The notes under the pieces were generated by a model. That model was given only the letters and a program-made list of their open reading frames with translations. It was not told the DNA's origin and made no database searches. Shown here piece after piece: positions 1,096 to 63,405 of a DNA stretch of 64,000 bases. The stretch comes from Leucoraja ocellata (taxonomy: Eukaryota), in the NCBI GenBank assembly GCA_036785375.1, contig JAWMAR010000070.1, positions 4,588,001 to 4,652,000 on the forward strand, given 5' to 3'. Made by a program: the position numbers and the translations under genes. Every line of letters starts with the position of its first letter. The stretch's first letter is position 1.

Positions 1096-1416
1096 AACCC
1101 GTGTCTGCTCCTGTGCTCAGATATCTGTCACCAGCAAATGCCTCACGTCTCGGAGGCTCAGTGTCAGTGTCCTGTGCGTCTGTCAGTGGATCCCTTCCTA
1201 TCCGTTACACATGGTGTGAGAAGAACGAGCATGGGTGGTCAACGATCTTGTATGGCAATCAACTGGATCTGAGTTGTGAAATCCTCGCCGGCCAACACCG
1301 TCAATATTACTGCACAGCCTCAAATAATCATGGGACAAAATCCAGTGAAATACTCAACGTGAAAGTCTTCAAACGAGAAGGAACGTGCATTTATGTGACA
1401 GAAATGAACAATGCAG
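1096..1416 (+). CDS. Gene A exon: C2-type Ig domain (FcRL/PECAM-like)
   Basis: cccacag|AA CCC GTG ... GCA G|gtgagt; 321 nt, phase 1-1; SVSC...GSLPIRYTW...YYCTASN. Confidence 0.88.
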
Positions 1417-4400
1417 GTGAGTGTTAACTCATTCACCCTTGGGTGAACCATTCACCAGTTTAAGAAGCACTGGCCTAGGCCACAGTTTCGCTGAACACTT
1501 GTGCTTGGTCTGTCATGACCCAGAATCCCGCTTGAAAGACACCCCATTTTCAACCTCCCCCGCTGATGCAGAGCAGCAGCAGTTTACACCATCTGCACGA
1601 TGCACTGCAGCAACTCACCAAGACTCCCTAGACAGCGCCTTCCAATTGCAACAGGCTCCGTGTCCAATGCATCATTCTTCACCATTCACACCCACATTGG
1701 CTGGGAAGCGCTTTGGAACGACCTGTACAGGTGGTAAGGGACAGTGTACAGTAACTGTCTCTCATCGCAATCTAGGTGGAATTCAACACAGCTAAGAAAA
1801 TGATTGGGCGGAGTCCCTTGTATACTAGAATGTGTATGTTTGTGAAAGGCTAATTTTGCTCTTCAATTTATCAAAGATGCTTCCTTTAGTTTCAGGTGCA
1901 CTATGGGCTGAGAGCGAAGTAAGAGGGGTTGTGGGAAGAGCGATCACAATCGATTTTCACTATGCAGCAGTGTACCGCTCACACACAAAATACTGGTGCC
2001 GTGGGACAAGTCGCCAGTGTACACATGTAGGTGAAACAAATGGGAAGAGCGGAAGAGCGTCAATCACAGATAACCCGGAACGAGGAATATTTACTGTGAC
2101 TGTGGAGGATCTTCACTCTGCTGATACAGGATGGTACAGATGTGGAATTACTGCACCTGGCGAACCAACATTTAAAGTATATCTCCAAGTATCTGAAGGT
2201 AGGTTTCTCAATGAGTGACTTTATGTCTCCACTTTGGCAACGCATAAAACATTTGTTAGGTGGGAATCTGGTGCACAGTTCTGGTCGCCGCTTTATAAAA
2301 CAAAAGATGTGGAAGGTTTGGAGAGGTTACAGAAAAGGTTCACCGGGATGTTTAGTTGTAGTTTACAAATGCAACTTGGAAACGGATCCTTCGGCCCACT
2401 GAGTCCACACCGACTAGCGATCACCGGTCACACTAGTTCTATGTTATTCCACTTCCCCATTCGCTCCCTACACACAATTCTACAATACCGTCATTCACAC
2501 ACATCATTAGTTCAACAGTATCACCATCAACAATTTTATACAAGGAAATTAAAAAGTTGTTGAGAGTGATACTGTTGCACTAATGAGGTGTTTGAATATT
2601 GATATTTTAGAATTGTGGCAGTTTCAGATTACAAATACTGCAGATTCTGGAAATATTAAACAAATAGAGATGGTGCTGCTGTGTACTGGTCCAGTGGCTG
2701 ACATGGTAGTTCTTTCAGAGAGGAGGATGGAGAGCCACAGAGATGTACAAATCTGGTAAATGGATTGTGAGGAGAAGGAGCTTTCTGACTGGCAATTTGG
2801 CTGTCGCTTTGAAATGTAGCATCTGAGTAGCTGACATTGTCCTCATCTGTACCGGAGTGTGTCCATGTCGATTCCCTTCAAAATTGCGCTCCAGCATACA
2901 CAGTTTGATTTTGATTAGACAAATGGGCAGCATCCTTGTTCTTTTCAATGTCTAACAGTGTTGCATAAACGATGCTCCCTTTTTCCTGCTGGTAATTCCT
3001 GAAATGTATAAGAGAATCCAAGATGTGTCTGATGATTTGTCTGATTTGTGTTCAGTTTTAGTTGGATAGGGTGCAGAATAGATTTACAAGGATGTTGCGA
3101 TGACTTGAGGGCCTGACTTCGAGGGACGGGTTATAGACAATAGACAATAGACAATAGAAAATTGAGCAGACTAGGACATTATTTCTTGGAGCGCAGTAGG
3201 AAGAAGGATGATCTTATGGCAGCTACAAAATCATGTGATGAATAGATCGAGTAAATGCACAGAGTCTTTTGCCCCGAGTAGGGGAATCTAGAACCAGAGG
3301 ACATAGTTTTAAGATGAGGGGGGAATGATTTAACAAGAACCTGGGGAGTAACGATTTTACACAAAGGTTGGTAGGTCTATGAAACGAACAGCCGACAGAT
3401 GTAGTTATGGCAGGTACTATCACAACCTTTAAGAATAATTTGGACAGGTACATGAATAGTATAAGTTTAGAGGGTTAAGGGCCAAGCAAGGGCAGGTGGA
3501 ACTAGTGCAGATTGGGAGTGTTGGTCAGTGCGGGCAGGTTTGACTGAAAGGCCTGTTTCTACGCTGTATGACTCTATGATTATATGTAGATGGATGGATC
3601 AGATTCCAACCCGGCGGCTCTGGCTAGGATACAGAGATGGTGGATATTGGCGAGTGTTTGATTTTCAGATGTTCATTCAGTATCTGACTGTTTGCTCCTT
3701 TCCCACAGAACCCGTGTCTGTTCCTGTGCTTGGATTTCTGTCACCAGCCAATGCTTCCTGTCTCGGGGGCTCAGTGACAGTGTCCTGTGAGTCGGTCCGG
3801 GGATCGCTTCCCATTAGGTACATCTGGTATGAAAAGACCCCATCTGGGGATTCAAAGATCTCAGACAACAAGAACCTGGATCTACGTTGTCAATCCTTCA
3901 AACACCAGCACCATCAATATTTCTGCACAGCTTCAAATCAACATGGATCAAAATCCAGTGAAATGGTCAACATGTCCATCTCCAGCAGTGACGTGCCCTG
4001 TAGTTTCCTGGTAAAAATCAACGGCACTGGTAAGTAGTGAAGGGAATGGGGAGAAGAAGGGGAAGTGGGGGTGGGGTTGTCCATAAAATCACAAGTGATA
4101 GAAGCAGAAATAGACCATTCAATCATGGCTGATCTATCTTCCCCTCTTCACCCCATTCTCCTGCCTTCTCCCCAAACCCCCGACACCCTGAAATCCATGC
4201 ACATTATTTAATTAATTTATCAAGATTAAAATGATGAAATTATGGCCCATTTGTCAATACTTGGTTGCTGGGCTCCAGAATTAGATTTCCCAGTGCTGGT
4301 GTAGGCCAGCTTCCCGGCTAGAACTTCCTCTTATGTTTACACAGCTTTAAACTAGGTTTGCAGTGACATCAGTCCAAGCACTTTCACTTTCCATCATCTC

Positions 4401-7400
4401 CACATGACCGACACTCAAATATGGGAAGGGAACAGAAATTATCCGTATATGTGACCACAGTTAACTTCTAGACTCTATCAGATTTGGTCCACTGTGTTAC
4501 CATTAAGTACCATCGATACTTATCCCATTTTTACCAGCCGCTCATCCATAGTCTTCTTAGACTTGGCAATTCAAGTGCCCTCACCATCTCGGTTTAAAAA
4601 TATTTCTTGCTCACATACCCTCCAAATATTCCACTGCTTAACCCAACCCTATGTTCTCCATTTCTATGCACATCTGCTGTGCTGATTTCCCACGAAATAC
4701 CCTATCTATGTTCCTCATAGCTTTGCACACCTGCAATAGCTTCCTCATTCCTCTCCAGTGTGGAATGAAAGTCCCATTTATCCAGTTTAGTTTAGAGATC
4801 CAGCGTGGAAGCAGCTGCCTTTCACCGGTACACAAATTCTACAATTAGGAACAATTCTAAACTAAGGGACAATTTACAGAACCCAATTAACCTACAAACC
4901 TACACGTCTTTAGTTTAGAGATACAGCGCGGAAACAAGCCCTTTGGCCCACCGGGTCCGCGCCGACCAGCAAGGACCCGCCGACCTGAGATCCATCCCCG
5001 CATATTAACACCATCCTACACCCACTAGGGATCATTTTTACATTTACCAAACCAATGTAACCTACAAACCTGCACGTCTTTGGAGTGTGGGAGGAAACTG
5101 AAGATCTCGGCGAAAACCCACGCAGGTCACGGGGAGAACGTACACACTCCGTATAGACAGCACCCGTAGTCGGGATCGAACTTGGGCTGCATTCGTTGGC
5201 AGCAACTCTACCACTGTGCTGCCGTATTGTTGGCGACCTGAGTTGTAACCAGTGCTCCAGCTTATCTTGACAACATCTCCCATTTGCTGCAAATTACAAT
5301 GAAGAAACATTGCCCTGTCTATTAAGCCTATAAACTCTTTACATCGGACAATCATGCTCTCTTGTTCAACTGCAAGCAAAAAGCAGTGAAACTGATTTTT
5401 ATTTCCTTGTTCCAACAGGACCTGAATATTCTTGTGAAACTTCGAAAGGATCCGAAGATTCTTCAAGGTAAACTACTCTGTTTCCAATGAAAGGTGCTAT
5501 ATACTAATTGCTGGTGTTTTGATTGTGATTGCTTCAATTGGGAAATTGGGAGAGTTGTGTCTTCCGTTCACTGGCATTAAAGGCCAGTTGGAGTATTAAT
5601 CTGAATACACAGTGACACAGCCAGTAGAATCACAGCCTCACAATGCCAGGACACTGATCTTATGACCTTATTCTATAATAATATAAGTATATAATTTGAA
5701 ACCAGATAATACTTAACAAATCAGAAGGGAAATTGCACTGGTTTACATCTCATTGTGTTGTGTATATGCTTGGGTGATAAGAACAAATTCCTCCATTTGT
5801 TGCCCTTCAGAGGGCGTTCCCTGCAGTATTCACCATGACATCTCCATCACTAACCTCATCCCATGGTGTGAGATGAGTATAGTTGTCAAACCCAATTATT
5901 GTTGTTTTGCCTTGCTGTGACCTGTTCTGGCGTGGTACTGATAGGAAAATGCATAGTGAATTATGGGCTAAAACACCACCTTTGATATCACTTATGGCAT
6001 GACCTTGCTGAGTTGGTCAAAGTCTCAATGTCAGTCACTCCAACAGCAGGAAGTGTCTCCACCTAGAACGTGACCCTGGGAGGGAGGCACGTTAGGTCAC
6101 ACTGCTGACCTTGAGATGGTTATGGTGAGCCACCTTCTGGATATGTTGAAGGTTTGTAGGTTAATTGACTTCTGTAAATTGTCTCTAATGTTTAGCGTAG
6201 ATCTAGTGTATAGGGATTGCTGGCCGATGAAGACTTGGTGTGCCGAAAAGCCTGTTTCCATGCTGTACCTCTAAACTAAACTAAACTAAATCAAACTCAG
6301 CTGAACTAAACTAAACTAATCATTGCAAACAAGTGTTTAACAGTTCCCACGCATCTTTCCTTAATGGTTGGACGCAATTGCTCTTCAACCAATTTCACGA
6401 TCGTTGGCCAATGTCACCTTACTGAGAGCAGATTAGTTGCTGCATTACCCACCGAAACAGACTCTTCATTTCCTTTGCTACACACTTCAAAAAAATCATG
6501 AAAGGTGCCGTATAAATGCTTGACTTGTGTTCTTTACTGAAGGCCAAGAATCAATGATGAGCCATACCTCACCCTTCCCTATTCTCTGTCTGACAGGATC
6601 ATTTACATAGTTGCGTCTGGTGTCACTGTGCTTCTCCTGATTCTCATCATTGCCTTCTTTTGGTACCGAAAGCGTAAAACCAAGGGTGAGTTTTTGATTT
6701 CCCTTAAATAATTTCACAATACATGCCTCGGTTCCTTGCAGAATGTCAAGAGATTTAATTCTGTTCTAATCAACAAATGCCCTGCATTAAAGTAATAAAG
6801 TGTAGGAGGAAGCATGAATGATCAATAATGCTATTATGTTTGATGCTATCATGGTGAGTCGGTGACAAAAACTGTTCTTTTAACATCATTGCACAGAAAC
6901 TGTCTGACCTTATATTTAGGAGTATCTCCTAAATAAAAGGTCTTCCACACAACACGTAGATGTTTCTGTGTGTTGGAAGGAACTGCCGATGCTGGTTTAC
7001 AATGAAGATAAACACAAAATGCTCAAACAGTTCAGCGGGTCAGGGTGCGCCTCTCCAGAAGAGGAATGGGTGAGGTTTAGAGTCGAGACCCTTCTTCAGA
7101 CTGAGAGTCAGGGGAAAGGGAAATGAGAGATCTAGAAGGTACATAGAACAAATGAATGAAATATGTGAATGAATGATGTTTAAACCTGTTCCTGATATGG
7201 CCCTATCGACATCATATTTTGCAGAATCCAAGTGCAATACATCACGCGGTGAAGACAACAATGAAACCCAGGTAAAACTGTGAAGTATAAATTCTCTGAG
7301 TGTTGAAGAATATATAGTATTGAATTATCTGTGTTTACACATGTCGTTTAGCAACACCAGTCCACTCCAGTTAAGAGATCCATTGCAGAAGCACGCCCTT

Positions 7401-7966
7401 CGGCCCACAGAGTCAACGCTGCCCGGAGAACCCTGCACACTAACACTATCCTACACACACTAGGGGCAATTTGCAATTATGCCAAACCATTTAACCTACA
7501 AACCTGTTGTAGGCACTGTCAGGCAACAACTCTACCGCTGCTCTGCCGAGCTGCGCTATCTTTGTGTTGTAAACAGCAGCCAATGGCTTGTACTGTACAC
7601 TGAACAGTTTGAGGCCTACTTTGTAATAGACATCTGTTGAGGACCTATCAGATCTATTAGGTTGTAAAATTGAATTTTGATATATTTTAGGAAATGACAG
7701 CATTGGAAGGGACTGACATTTATGCAAATCTGCAGCAACCTGGAAACAACAGGGCAGGTGGCCATTTGGATAACAATGAAGGTGGAATCACGTATGCAGT
7801 GGTGAATTGTCAAAGGAAGTCGAGATCAAGGGAGCATGTGACTGACAACGATGTCGTCTACGCAGATGTCAATTTTCATCGCAACTGCCCAAAGGGCAAT
7901 CGGAAACCCCACTCTACTGTGACTCCAGAGAACACTGAGTCAATCTATGCCTCTGTTGTTTCTTAG
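1096..7966 (+). CDS. Gene A (5'-partial): CD300/pIgR-like multi-Ig inhibitory receptor (MDIR-like); visible exons C2-V-C2-stalk-TM-cyt1-cyt2
   Basis: Exons 1096-1416, 1896-2198, 3709-4029, 5419-5467, 6597-6685, 7225-7271, 7691-7966 all have AG/GT boundaries and join in one open frame (phases 1,1,1,2,1,0). The 5' exons lie upstream of the window. Confidence 0.88.
1896..2198 (+). CDS. Gene A exon: CD300/pIgR-like V domain (B-strand Cys replaced by Phe)
   Basis: tttcag|GT GCA CTA TGG ... GAA G|gtaggt; KYWC-x6-C second disulfide, DTGWYRC; alternative in-frame acceptor at 1890. Confidence 0.88.
2715..2998 (-). pseudogene. Antisense relic of an ITIM-bearing terminal exon (copy 1)
   Basis: Minus strand: tctcttatacatttcag|GAATTACCAGCAGG..., encoding GSIVYATL...QTVYAGAQF...DNVSYSDATF with frameshifts. 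Confidence 0.65.
3060..3580 (+). mobile_element. Degenerate CR1-type LINE 3' end (copies at about 25890-26410, 48855-49330)
   Basis: gaaccagaggacatagttttaagatgag...gcaggtactatcacaacc...ggcctgtttctacgctgtatgactctatg tail. Confidence 0.65.
3709..4029 (+). CDS. Gene A exon: membrane-proximal C2-type Ig domain
   Basis: cccacag|AA CCC ... ACT G|gtaagt; 321 nt; EPVSVPVLGF...VSC...W...YFC. Confidence 0.88.
4912..5225 (-). mobile_element. tRNA-derived SINE (HE1/V-SINE-like); copies at about 27737-28050 and 50670-50906
   Basis: Reverse complement of the motif ggcacagcggtagagttgctgcc...gttcgatcc...ggagtttgtacgttctccccgtgacc...cccacactccaaagacgt, repeated many times in the window. Confidence 0.7.
5419..5467 (+). 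CDS. Gene A exon: short stalk (GPEYSCETSKGSEDSSR)
   Basis: ttccaacag|GA...TCA AG|gtaaac; 49 nt, phase 1-2; bridges C2 to the TM frame; present in genes B and C. Confidence 0.8.
6597..6685 (+). CDS. Gene A exon: transmembrane (IIYIVASGVTVLLLILIIAFFWY-RKRKTK)
   Basis: ctgacag|G ATC...AAG G|gtgagt; uncharged hydrophobic helix followed by a basic stop-transfer. Confidence 0.9.
7225..7271 (+). CDS. Gene A exon: cytoplasmic 1 (ESKCNTSRGEDNNETQ)
   Basis: ttttgcag|AA...CAG|gtaaaa; 47 nt, phase 1-0. Confidence 0.8.
7691..7966 (+). CDS. Gene A terminal exon: ITIM-bearing tail
   Basis: attttag|GAA ATG...TAG; motifs DIYANL, ITYAVV, VVYADV, SIYASV. Confidence 0.9.
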   Translation, partial: EMTALEGTDIYANLQQPGNNRAGGHLDNNEGGITYAVVNCQRKSRSREHVTDNDVVYADVNFHRNCPKGNRKPHSTVTPENTESIYASVVS

Positions 7967-14064: not shown

Positions 14065-14138
14065 ACTATTTGGGAGATGCGGTTGCATCTGAGAGCTCAG
14101 AGCTGAGCGACAGGCAGACAAGTGCTGGCCTTGTCACT

Positions 14139-49000: not shown

Positions 49001-52000
49001 AGGTCGAGTAAATGCACAGAGTCTGTTGCCCAGAGTAGGGGAATCGAGAACCAGAGGACATAGTTTTAAGATGAGGAGAATGATTTAACAAGAATCTGGG
49101 GAGTAACGTTTTTACACAAGGTTGGTAGGTATATGAAACGAACTGCTGACGGAAGCAGTTATTGCAGGTACTATCATAACATTCAAGAAACATTTGAACA
49201 GGTACATGAATAGGATTAGTTTGGAGGGTTAAGGGCCAAGCATGGGCAGGTGGAACTAGTGTAGATAGGGCGTGTTGGTCAGTGCGGGCAAGTTAGAGAG
49301 AAGGAACTGTTTCTACGCTGCATGACTATGGTTATATGTAGATGGACGGGTCAGATTCCAACCTGGCGGCTCTGGCTATGATACAGAGATGTTGGATATT
49401 GGCGAGTGTTTGATTTTCAGATGTTCACAGTATCTGACTGTTTGCTCCATTCCCACAGAACCCGTGTCTGTTCCTGTGCTTGGATTTCTATCACCAGCCA
49501 ATGTCTCCTGTCTCGGGGGCTCAGTGACAGTGTCCTGTGAGTCGTTCCGGGGATCCCTTCCCATTAACTACACCTGGTATGAAAAGACCCCATCTGTGGA
49601 TTCAAAGATCTCAGACAACAATGCCCTGGATCTACATTGTCAATCCTTCAAACACCAGCACCATCAATATTATTGCACAGCCTCAAATAAACGTGGATCA
49701 AAATCCAGTGAAATGGTCAACGTGTCCATCTCCAGCAGTGACGTGCCCTGCAGTTTCCCAGTGAAAATCAACGGCACTGGTAAGTAGTGGAGGGAATGGG
49801 GAGAAGAAGGGGAAGTGCGGGTGGGGTGGTTCATAAGATCACATGTGATATAAGCAGTAATAGACCATTCAATCATGGCTGATCTATCTACCCCTCTTCA
49901 CCCCATTCTCCTGCCTTCTCCACATAACCCCCAACACCCTGAAATCCATGCACGTTATTTAATTTTTATCAAGATTAATATGATGGAATTATGGCCCATT
50001 TGTCAATACTTGGTTGCTGGGCTCCAGAAACAGATTTCCCAGTGCTGATGTAGGCCAGCTTCCCGGCTAGAACTTCCTCTTATGTTTACACAGCTTTAAA
50101 CTAGGTTTGTAGTGACATCAGTCCAAGCACTTTCACTTTCCATCATCTCCACATGACCGACACTCAAATATGGGAAGGGAACAGAAATTATCCGTAAATG
50201 TGACCACAGTTAACTTCTAGACTCTATCAGATTTGGTCCACTGTGTTACCATTAAGTGCCATCGATACTTATCCCATTTTTACCAGCTCCTCATCCATAG
50301 TCTTCTCAGAATTGACAATTCAAGTGCCTTCACCATCTAGGTTTAAAAATATTTCTTGCTCAGACACCCTCCAAATATTCTACTCCTAAACTCAACGCTA
50401 TGTTCTCCACGTCTATGCACATCTGCTGTGCTGATTTCCCACGAAGTACCTTATCTATGTCCCTCATAGCGACATTACAGGCACACATGTATTAGCTTCC
50501 TGGTTCCTCTCCTGTGTGGAATAAAACCCCAGCTATCCAGCCAGTTTAGTTTAAAGATCCAGCGTGGAAGCAGTTGCCTTTCACCGGTACACCCATTCTA
50601 CAATTAGGGACAATTCTAAATTAAGGGACAATTTACAGAAGCCAATTAACCTACAAACCTGCACGTCTTTAGTTTAGAGGTACAGTGCCTAAACAAGCCC
50701 TTCAGCCCACCGGGTCTGGGCCGACCAGCGATCCCCGCACATTATTAACCATCCTACACCCACTAGGGATATTAACCAAAGGCAATTAACCTACAAACCT
50801 GTACGTCTTTGGGGTGTGGGAGGAAACCGAAGATCTCGGAGAGAACCCACGCAGGTCACGGGGAGAACGTACAAACTCCATACAGGCAGCACCCGTGGTC
50901 GGGATCATTGCCCTGTCTATTAAGCCTATAAACTCCTTACATCGGACAAGCATGCTCTCTTGTTCAGCTGCAAGTGAAAAGCAGTGAAACTGATTTTTTA
51001 TTTCCTTGTTCCAACAGGACTTGAATATTCTTGTGAAACTTCAAAAAGATCCAAGTATACTTCAAGGTAAACTGTTTAAGAATTAACTGCAGATGGTGGA
51101 AAATCGAAGGTAGACAAAAGTGCTGGAGAAACTCAGCGGGTGCAGCAGCATCTATGGAGCGAAGGACATAGACAACGTTTCGGGCCGAAACCTTTCTTCA
51201 GACTGATGGATGGTCTGATGAACGGCTTCGGCCCAAAACGTTGCCTATTTCCTTCGCTCCATAGATGCTGCTGCACCCGCTGAGTTTCACCAGCACTTTT
51301 GTCTACCTTCAAGGTTAACTACTCTGTTTCCAATGAAAGGCGCCATGTACTAATTGCTGGTGTTTTGATTGGGATTGCTTCAATTGGGAGAAGTTTGTGT
51401 CTTCCGTTCACTGGCATTCAAGGCCGGTTGGAGTATTGATCTGTACGCACAGTGACACAGCCAGTGGAACCACAGCCTCACAAAGCCAAGACCCTGAACT
51501 TAGGTGCCGTCTATGTGTGTTCTGCATATTTTGCTTTCATTGTGTTGGAAGGAACTGCAGATGCTGGTTTAAACTGAATATAGATACAAACAACTGGAGT
51601 AACTCATCGGGTCAGACAGCATCTCTGGAGAAAAGGGATAGGTGACGTTTCGGGTTGAGACCCTTCTTCAGATTGAGAGTCAGGGTAACGAGAGCGATAT
51701 CGACGGTGATATAGAAAGATATAAAACAATGAATGAAACATATGCAAAAAAGTAACGATGATCAAGGAAACGATCCATAGGTAGCTGTGGGTTAGGTGAA
51801 AACGAGTTATACAGACAATGAGACACTACAAGACAACAGTGAAATTCATACCACGACTAGAGTGGGGGGAGGACATAGAGAGAGGGGATGCAAGGGTAAT
51901 TTAAAGTTAGAGAAATCAACATTTATGCTGCTTGGCAGTAAGCTGCCCAAGAGAAGTATGAGGTGCTGGTCCTCTAATTTGCATATGGCCTCACTCTGGC

Positions 52001-55000
52001 AATGGAGGAAGCCCAGGACAGAACAGTCAGTTTGGGAATGGGCGGGGGAGTTAAAGTGTTTAGCAACTGGGAGATCATATAGTGCCAGGAGGACTGAGCA
52101 TAAGTGTTCAGTGAAACGATCGCCCAGTCAACGTTTGGTCCTGCTGATGTATAAGAGTCCACACCTCATACAGTAGATGAGGTTGGATGAGGTTCAAATG
52201 AACTCAATCCTGAAAGGACAGTTGAGGTCCTTGGACAGAGTCGAGGGAGGAGGTACGGGGACAGGTGTTGCGTTTCCTGTGGTTGAAAGGGAAGGTATTG
52301 GGGAGAGCTATTGGATGGGAAAAGATGAGATAACCAGGGAGGTATACGGGACCTCAAACATACGTAATAGTGAAAGGCTTGTATAGAGTGTATGTGGGGA
52401 GGATGTTTCCACCAGTGGGAGATTCTAGGACTAGAGGTCACAGCCTCAGAATGAGATGTTCTTTTAGGAAGAAGATGAGGAGAAAATCCTTTAGTTTGAG
52501 GGTGAATCTGTGGAATTATTTGCCTCGGAATTCTGTGGAGGCTAATCAGTGGATATTTTTAAGGCAGAGATAGCTAGATTCTTCATTAGTACGGGTGTTA
52601 GAGGTTATGGGGAGAAGGCAGGACAATGGAGTTTGGAGGCAGAGATAGATCAGTCATGATTGAATGGCGGAGTAGATGTGATGGGCCAAATTCCCTAATT
52701 CTTCTCATATTGCTTATGTATATGACTTGCAAACCAGATATTAGTTAACTCACCAATAGTGAAATTGCGCTGGTTTGCATCTCATTGTGTTGTGTATATG
52801 TTTGGGTGATAAGAACACTTCCTCCATTTGTGGTACCTGTACTCCCTGCGGTATTCACCATGACTTCTCCATCACTAACCTCATCCCATGGTGTGAGATG
52901 AGTATAGTTGCCAAACCCAAGTATAGTTGCTTTGCCTTGCTGTGACCTGCTCTGGCATGGTACTGATAGGAAAATGCATAGTGAATTATGGGCTAAAACA
53001 CCACCTTTGATATCACGTATGGCAACACCTTGCAGAGTTGGTCAAAGTCTCAATGTCAATCACTCCAACAGCAGGAAGTGTCTCCACCTAGAACCTGACC
53101 CTGGGATGGTAGGCATGTTAGATCACACTGCTGACCTTGAGATGGTCATGGTGAGCCGTCTTCTAGATATGTTGAAGATGTTTCATATTCCAGACGGCTC
53201 TTAGCGAACAGTCACTGTCCAAACCCAATGTTGGTGGAGGTGAAGATGGAGTTGTAAATGGCATTGTGGTGAGATTTGTTGTGAACCAAGTGCATTGTTT
53301 TCTCTTTGGCCTGGTGTTCTCTCCACCGAGGTTGGAACAAGGTTGTAGAACTGTATTCACACAGTGGTGGTTTCAATGATAGCTGCAAATATTTGGTTAA
53401 TACACTGCAGTATTGAGGGGGGGGGGGGGGGGGGGGGGGGGCAGCATGCTGGCAGTCAGATATGAAAACTCTAAAAACAGTGGCATGGAGGCACAGCGGT
53501 AGAGTTTCTGCCTTATTGCCCCAGACACGTGTTCGATCCCGACAACGGATGCTGTCTGTACGGAGTTTGTTCGTTCTTTCAGTGACCACAGGGGTTTTCT
53601 CCAGTTTTCTCTGGGTGTTCCAGTTTTCTCCCACATTCCAAAGACGTGCAGGTTTGTAGGTTAATTGGCTTCAGTAAATTGTCTCCGATGTTTAGGACGG
53701 ATCTAGTGTATGGGGATTGCTGACCGATGCAGACTTGGTGGGCCGAAAGGCCTGTTTCCATGCTGTATCTCTAAACTCAACTAATCTAATCGAAACTCAA
53801 CTCAACTAATCATTGCAATAAAAGTGTAACAGTTCCCATACATTGTTTGTCAAGGAGGAGGGAGGGTTCCTTAATGGTTGGACGCATTTGCTCTTCAACC
53901 AGTTTCACGATCGTTTGTGAATGTCACCTTACTGTGAGCAGATTAGCTGCTGCATTACCCACCGAAACAAACTCTACACCTCATTTCCTTTGCTGCACAC
54001 TTCAAAAAAATCATGAAAGGTGCCATATAAATGTTTGACTTTTGTTCTTTACTGAAGTCCAAGAATCAATGATGAGCCATGTATCACCCTTCCCTATTCT
54101 CTGTCCAACAGGATCATTTACATAGTTGCGTCTGGTGTCACTGTGCTTCTCCTGATTCTCATCATTGCCTTCTTTTGGTACCGAAAGCGTAAAACCAAGG
54201 GTGAGTTTCTGATTTCACTTAAATAATTTCACAATACATGTCTGAGTTCCTTGCAGAATGTCAAGAGATTTAATTATGTTCTAATCAACAAATACCCTGC
54301 ATTAAAGTAATAAAATGTAGGGAGAAGCATGGATGATCAATAATGCTATCATGTTTGATGCTTTCATGGTGACTCAGTGAAAAACTGTTCTTTGAACATC
54401 ATTTTACAGAAACTGTCTGAGTGTGAAATGGCAGAGATGTGTGAGAACTAAGAGGCCAGGTAGAAGTAAGATTTACATAGATACTCTCATCCTCTCAGCT
54501 GTTAGAATATGCTTTGTGTGATTAGCTGTTGTATTTCGATTCAGGTGAAGTCGTGTTTATTGTCACATGCACAAGCATGGTGAAGTACAGTTACAATGAA
54601 GATCACGCCTGCAGCCTCACATGGACATAGACAACGTACAACATACCTGCATCACAGAGGGCGGTGGGTATATGGCAGAAGCTGCCAGAGGAGGTAGTTG
54701 AGGCAGAGCTGGTCTAGCTAGGACAGGTAATCCAAGATGTGAACGCCCATGAACTTGAAGCTGCCAACTATCTTCACCGCCGATGATGGTAGATGGATGG
54801 GCCGATTAGCATAATTCTGCTCCTATCACTTACTGAACTTATGAAAACCTGTTTTAGCAAATAAGGTTAGGACAATAGACACAAATGCTGGAGTAACTGA
54901 GTGGAACGTGCAGCATCTCTGGAGAGAAGGAATGTGTGACATTTCGGGTCAAGACCCCTTTTCAGACTGATGTCAGGGGAGTTGGTAGTACAGAGATAAA

Positions 55001-56391
55001 ATGTAGTCGGAGGCAGTAAGACTAGTCAAAGAACTGGGAATGGGGAGGGGATGGAGAGAGAGGGAAAAACAAGGGTTACTTGAAGTTAGAGAAGTCAATG
55101 TTCATACCGCTGGGGTGTAAGCTGCCCAAGCAAAATATGAGGTGCTGTTCCCCCAATTGGTGCTGGGTTTCACTCTGACAATGGAGGAGGCCCAGGACAG
55201 AAAGGTTAGTGTGGGAATGGGGGGAGGAGTTAAAGTGTTGAGCAACCGGGAGATCGGGTAGGTTTAGGCATCTGTTAGGAGGGATGGGTAGAGCACAGGG
55301 AATATGATACAGCAACCAGAACAACAGGGCTGATTCTTATTCCGTACGTGCAGTACTTTTGACCTAAATATAAGGTCTTGCACACAACACGTAGATGTTT
55401 CTGTGTGTTGGAGGGAACTACAGATGCTGGTTTACAATGAAGATAAACACAAAATGTTCAAGCAATTCAGCGGGTCAGGGTGCGTCTATGCAGAAGAGGA
55501 ACAGGTGACGTTTCGAGTCGAGACCCTTCTTCAGACTGAGAGTCAGGGGAAAGGGAAACAAGAGATCTCGAAGATACATAGAACAAATGAATGGAATATA
55601 TGAATGAATGATGTTTAAACCTGTTCCTGATATGGCTCTATCGACAACATATTTTCCAGAATCCAAGCGCAATACATCACACGGTGAAGACAACAATGAA
55701 ACCCAGGTAAAAATGTGAAATATAAATTCTCTGAGTGATGAAGAATATATAGCATTGAATTATCAGTGTTTACACAGGTCGTTTAGCAACACCAGTCCAG
55801 TCCAGTTAAGAGATCCAGCGCAGAAACAGGCCCTTTGGCCCACAGAGTCTAGGCCGACTAACGAACCCTGCACATGTACAGTATCCTACACACACTAGGG
55901 GCAATTTGCAATTATGCCAAACCAATTAGCCCACAAGCCTGTTGTAGGCGCTGTCAGGCAGCAACTCTACTGCTGCTCCACCGTACTGCACTATCTTTGT
56001 GTTGTAAACAGCAGCAATGGCTTGTTCTATACACTGAACAGTTTGAGACCTACTTTGTAATAGACCTCTGTTGAGGACCTTTCAAATCTATTAGGTTGTA
56101 AAATTGGATTGTGTTACATTTTAGGAAATGGCAGTGTTGAAAGAGGACCACGTTGATGCAAATCTGGAAAACAACAGGGCAGGTGACCATTTGGATAACA
56201 ATGAAGGTGGAATCACGTATGCAGTGGTGAAATTTCAAAAGAAGACGAGACCAAGGCAGCATGTGGCTGAAAACGCTGTCGTCTACGCAGATGTCAAGTT
56301 TCATCGCAACTGCCCAAAGGGCATTCGGAAACCCCAATCTCCTGGGACTCCAGAGAACCCTGAGTCAACCTATGCCTCTGTCGTTTCTTAG
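36953..56391 (+). CDS. Gene C (complete): 6-Ig-domain CD300/pIgR-like inhibitory receptor, leader-(V-C2)x3-stalk-TM-ITIM tail, about 799 aa
   Basis: 11 exons sum to 2400 nt in one open frame with canonical splice sites. Confidence 0.87.
38081..38395 (+). CDS. Gene C exon V1
   Basis: tttcag|GT GCA GTG...GAC G|gtacgt; 315 nt (alternative acceptor 38075). Confidence 0.9.
39520..40160 (-). mobile_element. 5'-truncated Rex1/Babar-like non-LTR retrotransposon
   Basis: Minus ORFs KARQRLYH..RQLRKF / SGNITVWFGNSS..DRKALQRAVRSAER...SFFSQAIRTL; (cttga)n-type 3' tail. Confidence 0.8.
40425..40640 (-). mobile_element. CR1-type LINE 3' tail
   Basis: catagaaacatagaaatt...ggccattcggcccttcgagcctg; reverse complement of the tail at about 48530-48748. 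Confidence 0.7.
40645..40672 (+). ncRNA. Minimal type-I hammerhead ribozyme-like motif (Penelope type)
   Basis: CTGAAGA-A-GGGTC.TG.GACCC-GAAAC-GTC. Confidence 0.55.
41676..41996 (+). CDS. Gene C exon C2-1
   Basis: cacag|AA CCC...GCT G|gtgagt; 321 nt. Confidence 0.88.
42552..43075 (-). mobile_element. Young Penelope-like element fragment with a 15-bp TSD
   Basis: TSD ctaggtggaattcaa at 42537-42551 and 43076-43090; minus ORF GDRFAEHLRSV...HLIFRLGSLHPGGMNIEFSQF (GIY-YIG C-terminus); empty site in paralogous introns. Confidence 0.88.
42618..42645 (-). ncRNA. Minimal hammerhead ribozyme-like motif
   Basis: Minus strand: CTGAAGA-A-GGGT(TTCG)GCCC-GAAAC-GTT, at the 3' end of a young Penelope copy. 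Confidence 0.6.
43202..43513 (+). CDS. Gene C exon V2
   Basis: tttcag|GT GCA...GAA G|gtaggt; 312 nt. Confidence 0.88.
45798..46115 (+). CDS. Gene C exon C2-2
   Basis: cccacag|AA CCC...ACA G|gtgagt; 318 nt. Confidence 0.88.
47350..47661 (+). CDS. Gene C exon V3
   Basis: tttcag|GT GCA...GAA G|gtgggt (weaker donor); 312 nt. Confidence 0.85.
48170..48764 (-). pseudogene. Antisense ITIM exon relic (copy 3, split by a CR1 3'-end insertion at about 48445-48748)
   Basis: GSIVYATV...QTV-AEMQF...DNVSYSDTTF; acceptor tttcag immediately before 48764. Confidence 0.62.
48445..48748 (+). mobile_element. CR1-type LINE 3' end insertion
   Basis: FRTEMRKTFFTQRVVNLWNCLP; tail ggctgaatggcctactcctgcacc; absent from paralogous introns. 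Confidence 0.8.
49459..49779 (+). CDS. Gene C exon C2-3 (membrane-proximal type)
   Basis: cccacag|AA CCC...ACT G|gtaagt; 321 nt. Confidence 0.88.
51018..51066 (+). CDS. Gene C stalk exon (GLEYSCETSKRSKYTSR)
   Basis: aacag|GA CTT...AG|gtaaac; 49 nt. Confidence 0.8.
51106..51310. repeat. Palindromic Penelope-derived element (two inverted arms of about 98 nt, each with a hammerhead-like motif)
   Basis: Arms 51106-51203 and 51213-51310 are reverse complements with a few mismatches. Confidence 0.85.
51540..52350 (-). mobile_element. Penelope-like element fragment (followed by a CR1 3' fragment at about 52370-52720, +)
   Basis: Minus-strand GIY-YIG-like remnants, same family as 42552-43075. Confidence 0.7.
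54112..54200 (+). CDS. Gene C transmembrane exon
   Basis: caacag|G ATC ATT...G|gtgagt; appears nucleotide-identical to the TM exons of A and B. Confidence 0.9.
54875..55265 (-). mobile_element. Penelope-like element 3' fragment
   Basis: Minus ORF PDLPVAQHFNS..HLIFCLGSLHPSGMNIDFSNFK. Confidence 0.75.
55660..55706 (+). CDS. Gene C cytoplasmic exon 1 (ESKRNTSHGEDNNETQ)
   Basis: tttccag|AA TCC...CAG|gtaaaa. Confidence 0.8.
56125..56391 (+). CDS. Gene C terminal ITIM exon
   Basis: ttttag|GAA ATG GCA...TAG; ITYAVV, VVYADV, STYASV; first Tyr motif lost (HVDANL). Confidence 0.9.
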   Translation, partial: EMAVLKEDHVDANLENNRAGDHLDNNEGGITYAVVKFQKKTRPRQHVAENAVVYADVKFHRNCPKGIRKPQSPGTPENPESTYASVVS

Positions 56392-57649: not shown

Positions 57650-58460
57650 GGAGGCCTTTGAGGTTGGGACCCTTCTTCAGAGAAAGGTTCTGACCCAAAA
57701 TAGTACCAATCCATTTCCGCCAGAGATGTTTTTTGACCATCTAAGTTACTCCAGCATTTTGGGTTTGTCTTTGGTATAAACCGGCATTTATTATAGCTAT
57801 TTCTGAGCGGTTTGGTTCAATTCGTCGGGTGTCAGGGGTGATGGGGAGGAGGCAGGAGGGAGAGGTAGATTAACGATGAAGGAATGGTGGAGTAGCCTTG
57901 AATAACCAAATTGGCTGCTCCTATCACAAATGGCTTTATGAATTCCACTCCCATCACCAATCTCTTTCATCCGCTAGTATAATGAATGAGCCTAGATCAT
58001 GCATACAAATGATAAAATGGCGCTGCTTCCCATTCCTATTATACCCACACTCATTCCCCCCACCCACAAGTTCCCCAACCCTACCATCATCATTCCTTGC
58101 AAGGGTCTGCCTAAGCGCACCACACCCCATTGTCTCTGGGGCAAAATATTGTGGGTTCAAGTCTGTAAAGGGGCAATGGATCAAGCAAGAAAATGGGTTC
58201 AAGTGGATAGTGGGCTAAGGCAGATAAGCCCAAGATGTAAAATGATCCTCAAGCCTGGGTAAGGGGCCTCACTGAAACTTGGTCAAGACTGGATTTTACC
58301 TGCCTCAGTGACCAGTTGCAAATAAAATCTTAAGTGAGACCATCCCTAGATACTGCACAGCCAAGGGGAAATGGGGAGAGGGAGCACAGTAATGTAGCGT
58401 GGAACTGCAGAACTATTCATAGCTTTTATAGCCTATTAACAGTGCAAGAAGTGAGTCAAG

Positions 58461-59306
58461 TATGCAGATGGTACAACGGTGATTGGCCTCATCAGCAACA
58501 TCGATGAGCTGGCCTACAGGGAGGAGGTCCAGCACTTAGCAGCATGGTGCGCTGACAACAACCTGGCCCTTAACTCCAAGAAGACCAAGGAGCTCATTGT
58601 AGACTTCAGGAAGTCCAGAGGCGGCACGCACACCCCCATCCACATTAACGGGATGGAGGTGGAACGTGTTTCTAGCTTCAGGTTCCTGGGAGTCAACATC
58701 TCCGATGACCTCTCTTGGACCCACAATACCTCTACTCTGATCAAGAAGGCTCATCAGCGTCTCTTCTTCCTGAGGAGACTGAAGAAGGTCCATCTGTCTC
58801 CTCAGATCCTGGTGAACTTCTACCGCTGCACCATCGAGAGCATCCTTACCAACTGCATCACAGTATGGTATGGCAACTGCTCTGTCTCCGACCGGAAGGC
58901 ATTGCAGAGGGTGGTGAAAATTGCCCAACGCATCACCGGTTCCACGCTCCCCTCCATTGAGTCTGTCCAAAGCAAGCGCTGTCTGCGGAGGGCGCTCAGC
59001 ATCGCCAAGGACTGCTCTCACCCCAACCATGGACTGTGTACCCTCCTACCATCCGGGAGGCGCTACAGGTCTCTCCATTGCCGAACCAGCAGGTCGAGGA
59101 ACAGCTTCTTTCCGGCGGCTGTCAACAACGTACCTCGGTGACTGCCAATCACCACCCCACCCCCCCCCCCCCCCCCCCCCCCCCCCGGACACTTATTATT
59201 TTTTATTCAAATCGTTTGCTATGTCGCTCTTCAAGGGAGATGCTAAATGCATTTTGTTGTCTCTGTACTGTACAATGACAATTAAAATTGAATCTGAATC
59301 TGAATC
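58461..59306 (+). mobile_element. 5'-truncated Rex1/Babar-like LINE with TSD
   Basis: RT C-terminus YADGTTVIGLIS...KTKELIVDFRK...SFRFLGVNI; (gaatct)n tail; TSD tgagtcaag at 58452-58460 and 59307-59315; empty site at about 11157-11165. Confidence 0.9.
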
Positions 59307-63175: not shown

Positions 63176-63347
63176 TTAAATTTAACTGAGACAACTTCAA
63201 ATTCTAAAGTTTCATATTTTATCATCAGTCTCATTCTGGTTTCACAATCAGGTTTCCTGTTCTCTTCTTCCTCATTCTTAATACATGCCATATTTGACAG
63301 ACTGTTCAGTCTGAGGACTAAGAGCTGAGCAGCAGGTCAGTGCTAAC

Positions 63348-63405
63348 ATGGTCTCCTTGGATAAAACTATGTGGATTCCAATGCTGCTCATTTATTCCAT
63401 GCCCG
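63348..63405 (+). CDS. Gene D leader exon (MVSLDKTMWIPMLLIYSMP); divergent paralog, remainder beyond the window
   Basis: Homologous to the B/C leader (DKTMWIP.LLI.S.P); phase-1 donor G|gtaagt; not in the ORF track. Confidence 0.8.

What the first reader, a model, noticed from the sequence alone, without database searches (positions are those of the whole stretch)
1096..63405. Cluster of long alternating (V-C2)n inhibitory Ig receptors with variable ectodomain length
Seen: three paralogs share leader, stalk, TM and ITIM-tail exons but carry different numbers of a two-exon module made of a CD300/pIgR-type V domain and an FcRL/PECAM-like C2 domain. Gene B has 5 modules (10 Ig domains), gene C has 3, and gene A has at least 2. 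A fourth, divergent leader follows. Known: the WC-x6-C second disulfide marks CD300/TREM/pIgR-family V domains, and skate MDIRs combine such V domains with C2 domains. Mammalian CD300s have a single V domain and pIgR has only V domains. Inference: a strictly alternating V-C2 polymer of up to 10 domains on an ITIM tail looks like a lineage-specific receptor system in which reach and valency change by module copy number. I do not recall such an architecture being described, but I cannot search.
Basis: partly seen in the sequence, partly recalled or inferred. Interest (0 to 1): 0.85.

Follow-up and report, generated by a model that had tools for sequence, protein, structure and literature searches.

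The report
Skate MDIR inhibitory receptor gene cluster
Three neighbouring skate immune-receptor genes of the already described MDIR family build their outer part from alternating V and C2 immunoglobulin domains, one of them with ten, so this is a longer member of a known family and not a new kind of receptor.

Summary
The + strand holds 19 intact Ig exons (9 V, 10 C2), all phase 1-1 with AG/GT. They alternate strictly and form three tandem genes that share leader, stalk, TM and a three-ITIM tail: B has 10 Ig exons, C has 6, and A is cut by the window start. V is pIgR/CD300-type and C2 is FcRL5-type.

It is not a new architecture. The genes belong to the MDIR family of the clearnose skate. MDIR3 (ABC86797.1, V-V-C2-V-C2, same tail) and MDIR5 (ABC86800.1, V-C2-V-C2) share all four domain subfamilies with the window. 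RefSeq models of skates, rays, sharks and a chimaera already show (V-C2)1-4 with TM and ITIMs. The unit that changes in number is an internal C2-V cassette between a variable N-terminal V1 and a fixed membrane-proximal C2.

New here in degree: a 5-module, about 1220-aa gene model, and strong diversifying selection on V1 (dN/dS 4.3). I found no transcript evidence for the 10-domain form; the only runs found were DNA-like. This scan had noted parts of this cluster before, in this window and in the two adjoining ones.

Verdict: new member of a known kind, moderate interest.

The parts
1096..1416 (+). Gene A (5' part lies upstream of the window): internal C2 exon
   Evidence: tblastn E 4e-59; 321 nt, AG/GT, open
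1896..2198 (+). Gene A internal V exon; the canonical first Cys is Phe (TGT>TTT). A second AG lies 6 nt upstream
3709..4029 (+). Gene A membrane-proximal C2 exon (C2m subfamily)
5419..5467 (+). Gene A stalk exon (contains a Cys)
6597..6685 (+). Gene A transmembrane exon, no charged residue in the helix
7225..7271 (+). Gene A short cytoplasmic exon
7691..7966 (+). Gene A tail exon with three ITIM-consensus sites and the stop codon
14139..14187 (+). Gene B leader exon (ATG to GT donor, phase 1)
   Evidence: 16 of 16 residues identical to the MDIR3 and XP_055510907.1 leaders
15267..15584 (+). Gene B N-terminal V exon (V1 subfamily, hypervariable)
16077..16397 (+). Gene B internal C2 exon 1
16877..17182 (+). 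Gene B internal V exon 2. It is the only V exon without the upstream AG, and its 3' end resembles V1 of gene B
19172..19489 (+). Gene B internal C2 exon 2
20538..20849 (+). Gene B internal V exon 3
21962..22282 (+). Gene B internal C2 exon 3
22587..22898 (+). Gene B internal V exon 4
24129..24449 (+). Gene B internal C2 exon 4
24929..25231 (+). Gene B internal V exon 5
26539..26859 (+). Gene B membrane-proximal C2 exon (C2m)
28246..28294 (+). Gene B stalk exon
29425..29513 (+). Gene B transmembrane exon
30053..30099 (+). Gene B short cytoplasmic exon
30511..30786 (+). Gene B tail exon with three ITIM-consensus sites and the stop. By reading, it is identical to the tail of XP_055510908.1
36953..37001 (+). 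Gene C leader exon
38081..38395 (+). Gene C N-terminal V exon (V1 subfamily, hypervariable)
41676..41996 (+). Gene C internal C2 exon 1
43202..43513 (+). Gene C internal V exon 2
45798..46115 (+). Gene C internal C2 exon 2
47350..47661 (+). Gene C internal V exon 3
49459..49779 (+). Gene C membrane-proximal C2 exon (C2m), 100% identical to residues 548-653 of XP_055510907.1
51018..51066 (+). Gene C stalk exon
54112..54200 (+). Gene C transmembrane exon
55660..55706 (+). Gene C short cytoplasmic exon
56125..56391 (+). Gene C tail exon with three ITIM-consensus sites and the stop, 100% identical to the tail of XP_055510907.1
63348..63405 (+). Leader exon of a fourth gene that continues beyond the window

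Best explanation
The window holds three tandem paralogs, and the start of a fourth, of the modular domain immune-type receptor (MDIR) family of cartilaginous fishes. They are of the inhibitory MDIR3 type. The source is Leucoraja erinacea or a very close relative.

Each gene encodes a type I membrane protein built as follows:
- signal peptide
- a variable N-terminal V domain (V1) of pIgR/CD300 type
- n copies of an internal cassette, FcRL-type C2 plus a conserved internal V (n = 4 in gene B, 2 in gene C)
- a distinct membrane-proximal C2
- a Cys-containing stalk
- an uncharged TM helix
- a tail with three ITIM-consensus tyrosines

Shown here: the exons, their phases and splice sites, the domain families, the identity with MDIR cDNA-derived proteins, the recent segmental and intragenic duplications, and the excess of amino-acid-changing substitutions in V1.

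Inferred:
- V1 at the tip binds a fast-evolving ligand.
- The tail, once phosphorylated, recruits SH2 phosphatases and dampens the cell, as established for ITIM receptors in general.
- Unequal crossing-over between the near-identical phase-1 cassettes changes ectodomain length.
- The same phase symmetry lets cassettes be skipped in splicing.

Whether all ten Ig exons of gene B enter one mRNA is not shown. I put it at about even odds that the full-length form is a main product.
For: Exon anatomy:
- 19 of 19 Ig exons are intact, phase 1-1 and strictly alternating.
- The small exons have canonical sites, and the chains are in frame at 15 and 11 exons.

Domain families:
- Pfam V-set at 45-49 bits (cutoff 26); Ig_2, Ig_3 and Ig_C17orf99 for C2.
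- PDB profile searches: pIgR 1.4e-62, CD300f 2.4e-22, NKp44 2.5e-10 and TREM2 about 1e-7 for V; FcRL5 1.9e-57 for C2.
- Single exons: V1 against pIgR D1 gives i-E 3e-13, and a C2 exon against its best single FcRL5 domain gives i-E 3.6e-07.

Family membership:
- A search with a Rhinoraja relative returns MDIR3 (701 aa) and MDIR5 (501 aa) of Raja/Rostroraja eglanteria among 86 hits. MDIR2 (416 aa) came.
- By my reading of the sequences and by HMM annotation, MDIR3 is L-V-V-C2-V-C2m-stalk-TM-tail with the same three ITIMs, and MDIR5 is V-C2-V-C2m.
- The window tail is 77-78% identical to the MDIR3 tail, and the leader matches 16 of 16. Internal V exons are 83-90% identical to MDIR3.
- In the trees, V-internal (99/99), C2-internal (100/100) and C2m (100/98) each form one supported skate clade. 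Each clade holds window, Leucoraja, Amblyraja, Rhinoraja and MDIR3/5 domains.

Duplication:
- 2925-15655 matches 25756-38466 at 96.5% over 12.7 kb. Cassettes are 90-95% identical with their introns.

Selection:
- V1 of B against C: 46.4 non-synonymous and 3.6 synonymous differences, dN/dS 4.3, Fisher p = 0.005.
- The V1 exon is 266/315 identical while the adjoining intron is 1042/1079 identical, p = 9e-13.
- C2m shows dN/dS of 0.42-0.43.
- There is no stop in the 14 internal Ig exons, where a neutral star-tree simulation expects about 7.8. The joint probability is about 3e-4, the product of the V-internal and C2-internal group probabilities printed. Every length difference is a multiple of 3.

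Tail: three sites fit [SIVL]xYxx[IVL] in A, B and C (my reading of the translations).
Against: - There is no RNA evidence for these genes. The only runs that hold the stretch behave as DNA: short contigs lie over the introns, and none of the listed joints coincides with an exon boundary (57 more joints were not shown).
- Internal cassettes compared pairwise have dN/dS of about 0.7-1.9, and one pair reaches 4.4 at p = 0.2. Purifying selection on them is therefore not shown by that measure.
- The stop-codon argument counts shared changes more than once, so it overstates significance.
- RefSeq models of L. erinacea carry only 2 or 3 modules together with these same tails (XP_055510908.1, XP_055510907.1). 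Either shorter products, another haplotype or exon skipping is plausible.
- Most window exons are 84-94% identical to those models, not 100%, so the species or haplotype is not settled.
- One V exon of gene A lacks the canonical Cys.
- The ligand, the cell type and the signalling are untested.
Confidence: 0.85

Rival explanations
1. The Ig exons are alternatively used cassettes. Mature mRNAs usually carry only 1-3 V-C2 pairs, and the 10-domain protein is rare or absent. On this reading the array is a menu of exons, not a polymer.
For: - Every Ig exon is phase 1-1, so any subset stays in frame.
- 8 of 9 V exons keep the same tandem acceptor as V1.
- The retrieved MDIR proteins have 2, 4 and 5 Ig domains.
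- RefSeq isoforms X1 and X2 of one L. erinacea gene share their first three Ig domains and then differ.
- Among the 271 fetched proteins, none with 5 or more modules has a TM.
- Internal cassettes have dN/dS near 1.
Against: - There are no stops or frame-breaking indels in the 14 internal exons.
- Splice sites are intact at all of them.
- (V-C2)4 models with TM and ITIMs exist in three other genera.
- Gene predictions are not transcripts, so they cannot count for either side.
Confidence: 0.4
2. Part of the repeat structure is an assembly artefact. Either cassettes were over-expanded, or two haplotypes were laid in tandem (the 96.5% A/B to B/C duplication).
For: - The 12.7-kb duplicate is very similar.
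- RefSeq models of the nearest species have fewer modules.
- Contigs of the runs laid on 14130-20129 are short and many differ from the window.
Against: - Copies differ by 3.5-10% along their whole length, with different intron sizes. For example, the V1-to-C2 intron is 0.5 kb in B and 3.3 kb in C.
- Several contigs from the runs match unique intron stretches of gene B without a difference (table 8). These runs may be the assembly's own source.
- RefSeq also annotates several adjacent paralogs, XP_055510906 to XP_055510908.
- The order of B's cassettes differs from C's.
Confidence: 0.07
3. The internal cassettes of the long genes are recent, functionally neutral duplications on their way to decay, so the long genes are young pseudogenes or hitch-hikers.
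For: - dN/dS is about 1 in many internal pairs.
- The canonical Cys is lost in one V exon of gene A.
- The copies are young, with dS of 0.01-0.09.
Against: - Zero stops against about 7.8 expected.
- Only in-frame indels.
- The internal V and C2 subfamilies are conserved across four skate genera.
- Differences among internal V exons sit in loop positions, by my reading of alignment A1.
Confidence: 0.1
4. These are the cartilaginous-fish orthologs of pIgR, or of FcRL5, as the automatic names say. On this reading they transport or bind immunoglobulin.
For: - RefSeq names the relatives 'polymeric immunoglobulin receptor-like' and 'Fc receptor-like protein 5'.
- The domain-level similarity is strong.
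Against: - Solved pIgR chains match the V profile in 4-5 stretches and show no C2-type domain.
- The FcRL5 chain matches the C2 profile in 6 stretches.
- The window's genes interleave both domain types, carry ITIMs, and form a large fast-evolving multigene cluster with a hypervariable tip. That is the habit of paired innate receptors, not of a single-copy transporter.
- No Ig binding has been tested.
Confidence: 0.04

Closest known systems
MDIR3, modular domain immune-type receptor 3 of the clearnose skate (ABC86797.1 / A0S0E9, 701 aa)
   Same: - Same leader: 16 of 16 residues.
- Same four domain subfamilies: V1, internal V, internal C2 and C2m.
- Same stalk with a Cys, same uncharged TM, and same tail with three ITIMs. 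Tail identity is 77-78%.
- Internal V exons are 83-90% identical.
   Different: MDIR3 is V-V-C2-V-C2m: 5 domains, with two N-terminal V domains and one cassette. Gene B is V1-(C2-V)4-C2m and gene C is V1-(C2-V)2-C2m. It comes from a different skate genus.
MDIR5 (ABC86800.1, 501 aa) and MDIR2 (A0S0E-series UniRef entry, 416 aa) of the same skate
   Same: MDIR5 is V-C2-V-C2m, the same alternation with one cassette. MDIR2 is V-C2 with ITIM-like sites.
   Different: MDIR5 has a different TM and a short tail without ITIMs. Both are shorter than the window's genes.
RefSeq gene models named 'polymeric immunoglobulin receptor-like' or 'Fc receptor-like protein 5' in elasmobranchs and Callorhinchus (for example XP_055510907.1 and XP_055510908.1 Leucoraja erinacea, XP_078277138.1 Rhinoraja, XP_051890649.1 Pristis, XP_059509193.1 Stegostoma, XP_042198175.1 Callorhinchus)
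   Same: - They show (V-C2)n with TM and ITIM-like tails for n = 1-4.
- Gene C's C2m, stalk, short cytoplasmic exon and tail are 100% identical to XP_055510907.1.
- Gene B's tail matches XP_055510908.1 by my reading of the sequences.
   Different: - They are predictions with unverified exon choice.
- None of those fetched has 5 modules with a TM.
- The two longest, P0154 (5 modules) and P0153 (6 modules), lack a TM. P0154 contains C2m domains in mid-chain, so it looks like several genes read together.
DICPs (diverse immunoglobulin domain-containing proteins) of bony fishes
   Same: - A multigene family of inhibitory, activating and secreted receptors.
- Ectodomains are D1-D2 or D1a-D2a-D1b-D2b, one Ig domain per exon.
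- Repeats are thought to arise from the clustered genes.

Source: bioRxiv 10.1101/2021.06.11.448072, passages read.
   Different: - That paper reports them from teleosts, holosteans and coelacanth, with at most four domains.
- I held no DICP sequence, so homology of D1/D2 with the MDIR V/C2 domains was not tested here.
Mammalian pIgR, CD300/CMRF35 family, NKp44, TREM
   Same: The V domain type with the extra C-C' disulfide motif; sequence matches.
   Different: pIgR is all-V. The CD300/CLM, NKp44 and TREM chains that matched carry a single V, and none interleaves C2 domains. That these proteins are single-V as whole molecules is established knowledge, recalled.
Human FcRL5
   Same: - The C2 domain type: six matched stretches, including the exon-start motif.
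- A long ectodomain (860-residue chain).
- ITIM signalling. This point is established knowledge, recalled.
   Different: FcRL5 has no pIgR-type V domains interleaved.

Membership tests
MDIR (modular domain immune-type receptors, clearnose skate) | Significant full-length sequence similarity to named MDIR proteins | tested here: met
   MDIR3, MDIR5 and MDIR2 were retrieved with relatives of the window's genes. Window exons are 68-90% identical to MDIR3/5 domains. The tail is 70-78% identical and the leader matches 16 of 16.
MDIR (modular domain immune-type receptors, clearnose skate) | Ectodomain assembled from a small set of distinct Ig-domain subfamilies in varying number. That the original paper names four subfamilies and 1-6 domains is my recollection of its abstract; the paper was not held. 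| tested here: met
   Three supported skate clades (internal V 99/99, internal C2 100/100, C2m 100/98) plus a looser V1 group. Each contains both MDIR and window domains.
MDIR (modular domain immune-type receptors, clearnose skate) | V-type domains related to CD300/CMRF35, pIgR, TREM and NKp44, and other domains related to FcR homologs | tested here: met
MDIR (modular domain immune-type receptors, clearnose skate) | Inhibitory members with cytoplasmic ITIMs and an uncharged TM (MDIR2/3 type) | tested here: met
   Three [SIVL]xYxx[IVL] sites in the tails of A, B and C, and no charged residue in the TM. The same sites are in MDIR3.
MDIR (modular domain immune-type receptors, clearnose skate) | Large clustered multigene family | tested here: met
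   Three genes plus a fourth leader in 64 kb. Earlier notes of this scan place more members in both adjoining windows (not checked by me).
MDIR (modular domain immune-type receptors, clearnose skate) | Expression as spliced mRNA in immune tissue | not testable with these tools
pIgR | Ectodomain made only of pIgR-type V domains, with no ITIM tail, acting as a single transport receptor | tested here: not met
   FcRL-type C2 exons alternate with the V exons. The tail has ITIMs. The genes form a tandem multigene family.
CD300 / CMRF35-like molecules | Single V domain on a stalk | tested here: not met
   Gene C has 6 Ig exons and gene B has 10.
FcRL | Ectodomain of C2-type domains only | tested here: not met
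   Half of the domains are V-set of pIgR/CD300 type.
DICP | D1 and D2 domains that group with DICP D1/D2 in a phylogeny | not tested
The architecture is compared only from the text read.

The most novel reading that the evidence does not exclude
Skate MDIR genes behave as length-adjustable inhibitory receptors.

- Unequal crossing-over among near-identical phase-1 C2-V cassettes makes paralogs, and possibly haplotypes, with 1 to at least 4 cassettes. That gives up to 10 or more Ig domains and about 1220 aa on one ITIM tail, longer than any MDIR or MDIR-like model with a TM that I could retrieve.
- Cassette skipping adds further length variants from one gene.
- Only the tip domain V1 is under diversifying selection.

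If so, reach from the membrane and recognition specificity would evolve separately in one receptor family that joins pIgR/CD300-type and FcRL-type domains. The family would date back to the chondrichthyan ancestor, which bears on the origin of both mammalian families.
Probability: 0.3. Interest if true: 0.55.

Novelty: new member of a known kind. Interest (0 to 1): 0.35.

Why it matters
MDIRs were described once, from cDNA of one skate. In the paper library searched here they are mentioned in a single later paper. Their genomic organisation seems not to have been written up: three full-text searches found nothing.

This window gives a clean genomic picture:
- One Ig domain per symmetric phase-1 exon.
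- A fixed frame (V1 ... C2m-stalk-TM-ITIM tail) with a variable number of internal C2-V cassettes.
- Very recent segmental duplication.
- A tip domain under strong diversifying selection.

It also shows at domain level that cartilaginous fishes carry both pIgR/CD300-type V and FcRL-type C2 domains. This runs against a published survey that found no pIgR or FcRL homologs in sharks (PMC4016189, passages read). The automatic RefSeq names ('pIgR-like', 'FcRL5', 'titin-like', 'CXADR-like') hide one family.

For comparative immunology this is a useful annotation and a testable case of length variation in an inhibitory receptor. It is not a new principle.

Tried and rejected
- RNA evidence. The look-up of sequencing runs listed three holders of unknown kind and one guessed RNA run of another organism. 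Laid on 14130-20129, the three behave as DNA: contigs lie over the introns, depth is huge in repeats, and the listed joints fall only inside repeats, none at an exon boundary (57 more joints were not shown). The fourth run laid one repeat fragment. So there was no test of splicing.
- Short-protein search with one C2 exon. It gave 2 hits among 4 candidates. One is a 183-aa ENA fragment (56% identical) that reads like an unspliced genomic exon with its flanks. It gave no junction evidence.
- The MDIR paper (PMC3701310, PubMed 16738934) is not held. What I say of its abstract is recalled.
- Extra or decayed Ig exons were searched for at E <= 50 and none was found.
- Rfam gave no match at gathering thresholds. 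The tandem-repeat scan found only small arrays and a C-rich tract.
- A first version of the neutral-stop simulation used a gapped DNA consensus that was out of frame for the V exons. I discarded it and redid it codon-wise.
- PECAM likeness of the C2 domain was rejected for lack of any PECAM match. One Scyliorhinus relative is merely named PECAM-like by RefSeq.
- Structure prediction and fold search were not run. Sequence matches to solved pIgR, CD300 and FcRL5 chains already settle the folds, and the tool returns no inter-domain geometry that I could use.
- I did not ask for supplementary files. The supplements of the bowfin DICP preprint may hold DICP sequences and exon tables that bear on the DICP comparison.
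- Rows dropped. The trees used domains of 10 of the 225 proteins then held, chosen to span skates, a sawfish, two sharks and a chimaera. The dN/dS table lists 15 chosen pairs, not all pairs.

Full report
**What is in the sequence.**
The window has no N and about 45% G+C. I translated one V exon and one C2 exon, taken by coordinates, and searched them against the window with tblastn. This gave 19 matches at E <= 1e-3: 9 V and 10 C2, all on the + strand, in strictly alternating order. A relaxed search (E <= 50) found nothing further better than E = 0.5 on either strand.

All 19 exons are open, 303-321 nt long (each a multiple of three), flanked by AG and GT, and in phase 1 at both ends. Using the leader, TM and tail as queries, and using two database proteins as guides, I placed the remaining exons with canonical splice sites:
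- a 49-nt leader
- a 49-nt stalk with a Cys
- an 89-nt TM exon without a charged residue
- a 47-nt cytoplasmic exon
- a tail exon with the stop

This gives gene A (start outside the window; C2, V, C2m, stalk, TM, two cytoplasmic exons), gene B (15 exons, 14139-30786, ten Ig exons), gene C (11 exons, 36953-56391, six Ig exons) and the leader of a fourth gene (63348-63405). The exon lengths add up in frame, to 1220 and 799 codons. I added lengths only.

**What the domains are.**
- Pfam calls the V exons V-set (45 and 49 bits, cutoff 26). It calls the C2 exons Ig_2, Ig_3 or Ig_C17orf99, just above their cutoffs.
- A profile of the nine V exons matches solved pIgR chains at 1.4e-62 (five stretches), CD300f/CLM-1 at 2.4e-22, CD300a at 3.1e-19, NKp44 at 2.5e-10, the IgM receptor FAIM3 at 8.6e-09 and TREM2 near 1e-7.
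- A profile of the ten C2 exons matches human FcRL5 at 1.9e-57 (six stretches). Titin follows far behind at 1e-14, then FcRL4 and CD22 near 1e-5. PECAM does not appear.
- Single exons give the same picture. V1 against pIgR D1 has i-E 3e-13 and CLM-1 scores 5.6e-19. A C2 exon against its best FcRL5 domain has i-E 3.6e-07, and the two share the exon-start motif.
- All nine V exons have the W-C-x6-C motif of this V type. That this motif marks the extra disulfide of pIgR/CD300 domains is established knowledge that I recall, not something tested here.

**What family it is.**
A profile search of 1.84 billion representatives gave 3303 proteins at E <= 0.001. The top hits are RefSeq models from skates, rays and sharks. 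Searching the 5.8-billion-protein collection with the Rhinoraja relative P0003 gave 86 hits at E <= 1e-20. Among them were 'modular domain immune-type receptor 3' and '5' of Raja (Rostroraja) eglanteria (accessions ABC86797.1 and ABC86800.1). A second search added MDIR2.

Read directly and annotated with HMMs built from the window's exons, the architectures are:
- MDIR3: leader-V-V-C2-V-C2m-stalk-TM-tail
- MDIR5: V-C2-V-C2m-TM
- MDIR2: V-C2-TM-tail

MDIR3 has the same leader (16 of 16 residues), and its tail is 77-78% identical to the tails of genes A and B, with the same three ITIM-consensus sites. Internal V exons of the window are 83-90% identical to MDIR3's internal V.

Maximum-likelihood trees of the domains show that in skates the internal V (99/99), the internal C2 (100/100) and the membrane-proximal C2 (100/98) are three separate supported clades. 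Each holds domains from the window, Leucoraja, Amblyraja, Rhinoraja and MDIR3/5. The N-terminal V domains fall outside the internal-V clade in looser groups.

So the window's genes are MDIR genes of the inhibitory MDIR3 type. A more exact formula than (V-C2)n is V1-(C2int-Vint)n-C2m, with n = 4 in gene B, 2 in gene C and 1 in MDIR5.

My recollection of the abstract of the MDIR paper (Cannon et al. 2006, Immunogenetics 58:362) is that it describes four domain subfamilies and one to six domains. I could not read the paper. PMC3031540, of which I read passages, confirms the family name, the species, the accessions and the likeness to CD300, TREM, FCAR and pIgR.

**How widespread the architecture is.**
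Of those, 97 are strictly (V-C2)n: 43 with n = 1, 32 with n = 2, 16 with n = 3, 4 with n = 4, one with n = 5 and one with n = 6.
- The four n = 4 models have a predicted TM and 1 to 3 ITIM-like sites (Pristis, two Mobula, Stegostoma).
- The n = 5 model (L. erinacea XP_055510906.1) and the n = 6 model (Mustelus 'titin-like') have no TM. The former has C2m domains in mid-chain, so it probably reads several genes together.
- Every hit with a C2 domain whose source name I saw is from a cartilaginous fish, Callorhinchus included.
- The bony-fish, turtle and other hits whose names I saw are V-only arrays.

Alternation and variable module number are therefore properties of a chondrichthyan-wide family, not of this locus. 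A published survey reported no pIgR or FcRL homologs in sharks (PMC4016189, passages read). At domain level the present data disagree with that.

**Which genome.**
Gene C's C2m, stalk, cytoplasmic exon and tail are 100% identical to L. erinacea XP_055510907.1. By my reading of the sequences, gene B's tail is identical to that of XP_055510908.1. Most Ig exons are only 84-94% identical to the L. erinacea models. The window is thus from that species (another haplotype or paralog block) or from a close relative; I cannot say which.

The two RefSeq isoforms are worth noting. They share their first three Ig domains. X2 then ends in a gene-B-type C2m, TM and tail, while X1 goes on to three more Ig domains and a gene-C-type tail. 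This means either read-through between neighbours or a prediction artefact.

**How the cluster evolved.**
Self-comparison shows a 12.7-kb segmental duplication, 2925-15655 against 25756-38466, at 96.5% identity. It carries the 3' end of one gene, the spacer, and the leader and V1 of the next gene. Cassettes, introns included, are 90-95% identical within and between genes, in an order that differs between B and C. That is the signature of repeated unequal crossing-over.

Inside the 96.5% block the V1 exon stands out. It is 266/315 identical, against 1042/1079 in the adjoining intron (Fisher p = 9e-13). It has 46.4 non-synonymous and 3.6 synonymous differences, giving dN/dS 4.3 and p = 0.005. 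Because dS (0.05) equals the intron divergence, diversifying selection fits better than conversion from a distant donor.

By my reading of alignment A1 and of the alignment to pIgR D1, the changes lie mainly in four places: the first strand, the stretch after the first Cys, the C-C' loop and the stretch after the last Cys. That these stretches are the CDR-like loops of pIgR D1 is recalled knowledge.

C2m is under purifying selection (dN/dS 0.42-0.43). The internal cassettes give 0.7-1.9, with one pair at 4.4 (p = 0.2), which cannot be told apart from neutrality.

Against decay: none of the 14 internal exons has a stop, where a neutral simulation expects about 7.8. The joint probability is about 3e-4, the product of the V-internal (0.043) and C2-internal (0.0078) group probabilities. 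This is overstated, because shared changes are counted repeatedly. All length differences are in frame.

**How it most likely works.**
Shown: a type I membrane protein with a long Ig ectodomain, an uncharged TM and three sites that fit the ITIM consensus. Established for ITIM receptors in general: tyrosine phosphorylation recruits SH2 phosphatases that damp activating signals.

Inferred here:
- V1 at the membrane-distal tip is the main recognition site and is chasing a variable ligand.
- The conserved internal cassettes act as spacers, and perhaps as extra binding sites for a conserved ligand.
- The stalk Cys may allow dimers.
- Cassette number sets the reach of the receptor.
- Because every Ig exon is phase 1-1, and 8 of 9 V exons keep the same double acceptor (two AGs 6 nt apart) as V1, cassettes can be skipped without loss of frame. 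MDIR3 and MDIR5 contain the two extra residues of the upstream acceptor.

Earlier notes of this scan place activating counterparts in the next window. I did not check them. The family's paired inhibitory and activating habit is also what I recall from the MDIR paper.

**What is not shown.**
No transcript of these genes was seen. The runs that hold the stretch are DNA-like, and none of the listed joints lies at an exon border; 57 more joints were not shown. The 10-domain product is therefore a gene model. I give it about even odds of being a main product, and 0.07 to an assembly artefact.

**Verdict.**
This is a new, long member of a known family. It comes with a useful genomic anatomy and a clear case of diversifying selection on the tip domain. 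Three full-text searches found no paper that describes the genomic organisation of MDIRs or such long members; the library lacks most subscription journals. Interest: 0.35.

Noticed in passing
window 15267-15584 against 38081-38395: The N-terminal V exons of genes B and C differ at 49 of 315 aligned bases, while the flanking intron is 96.6% identical. dN/dS is 4.3 (p = 0.005). This points to diversifying selection on the tip domain.
   Followed up: yes
window 1955-1957 (in V exon 1896-2198 of gene A): The canonical first Cys of the Ig fold is Phe (TGT>TTT). The closest RefSeq counterpart (XP_055511094.1) and all eight other V exons have Cys. This could be a polymorphism, a damaged exon or a base error.
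   Followed up: partly
window 40168-40236: A decayed leader-like stretch with a stop lies in the long first Ig intron of gene C (3.3 kb, against 0.5 kb in gene B). It suggests that gene C arose by fusing a leader-V1 unit to a downstream gene.
   Followed up: partly
window 2761-2982 (-) and 48098-48442 (-): On the opposite strand, in the last V-to-C2m intron, lies a tail-like exon with ITIM-like sites. It resembles the C-terminal tail of Rhinoraja XP_078277136.1. It is interrupted by a stop in gene A's copy and open (115 codons) in gene C's copy. Pfam finds nothing in it.
   Followed up: partly
window, 6 nt upstream of the V exon starts (1890, 15261, 20532, 22581, 24923, 38075, 43196, 47344): 8 of 9 V exons have a second AG 6 nt upstream of the AG used in my coordinates. 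The MDIR3/5 and RefSeq proteins contain the two extra residues, so the upstream site is probably the one used. V exon 16877 lacks it.
   Followed up: partly
window 16877-17182: This internal V exon has the short internal-V form in its middle, but its 3' end resembles V1 of gene B. It looks like a crossover inside the exon (alignment A1).
   Followed up: partly
window 2925-15655 and 25756-38466: A 12.7-kb segmental duplication at 96.5% identity whose unit is out of register with the genes: the 3' end of one gene, the spacer, and the leader and V1 of the next.
   Followed up: yes
RefSeq proteins XP_055510907.1 / XP_055510908.1 (P0155, P0171): Two isoforms of one annotated L. erinacea gene share three Ig domains and then end in gene-C-type and gene-B-type tails respectively. 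This is either read-through splicing between neighbouring MDIR genes or a prediction artefact.
   Followed up: partly
window 42764-43075 (-), 58455-59138 (+), 21292-21384: The introns and spacers are full of repeats. There are GIY-YIG (Penelope-like) remnants, which also recur between C2 and V exons, a reverse-transcriptase fragment, and a 93-nt C-rich tract. Rfam finds no RNA family.
   Followed up: partly
literature, PMC4016189: A 2014 survey states that sharks have no homologs of pIgR or FcRL. The MDIR domains match both at E below 1e-40 for whole chains.
   Followed up: partly
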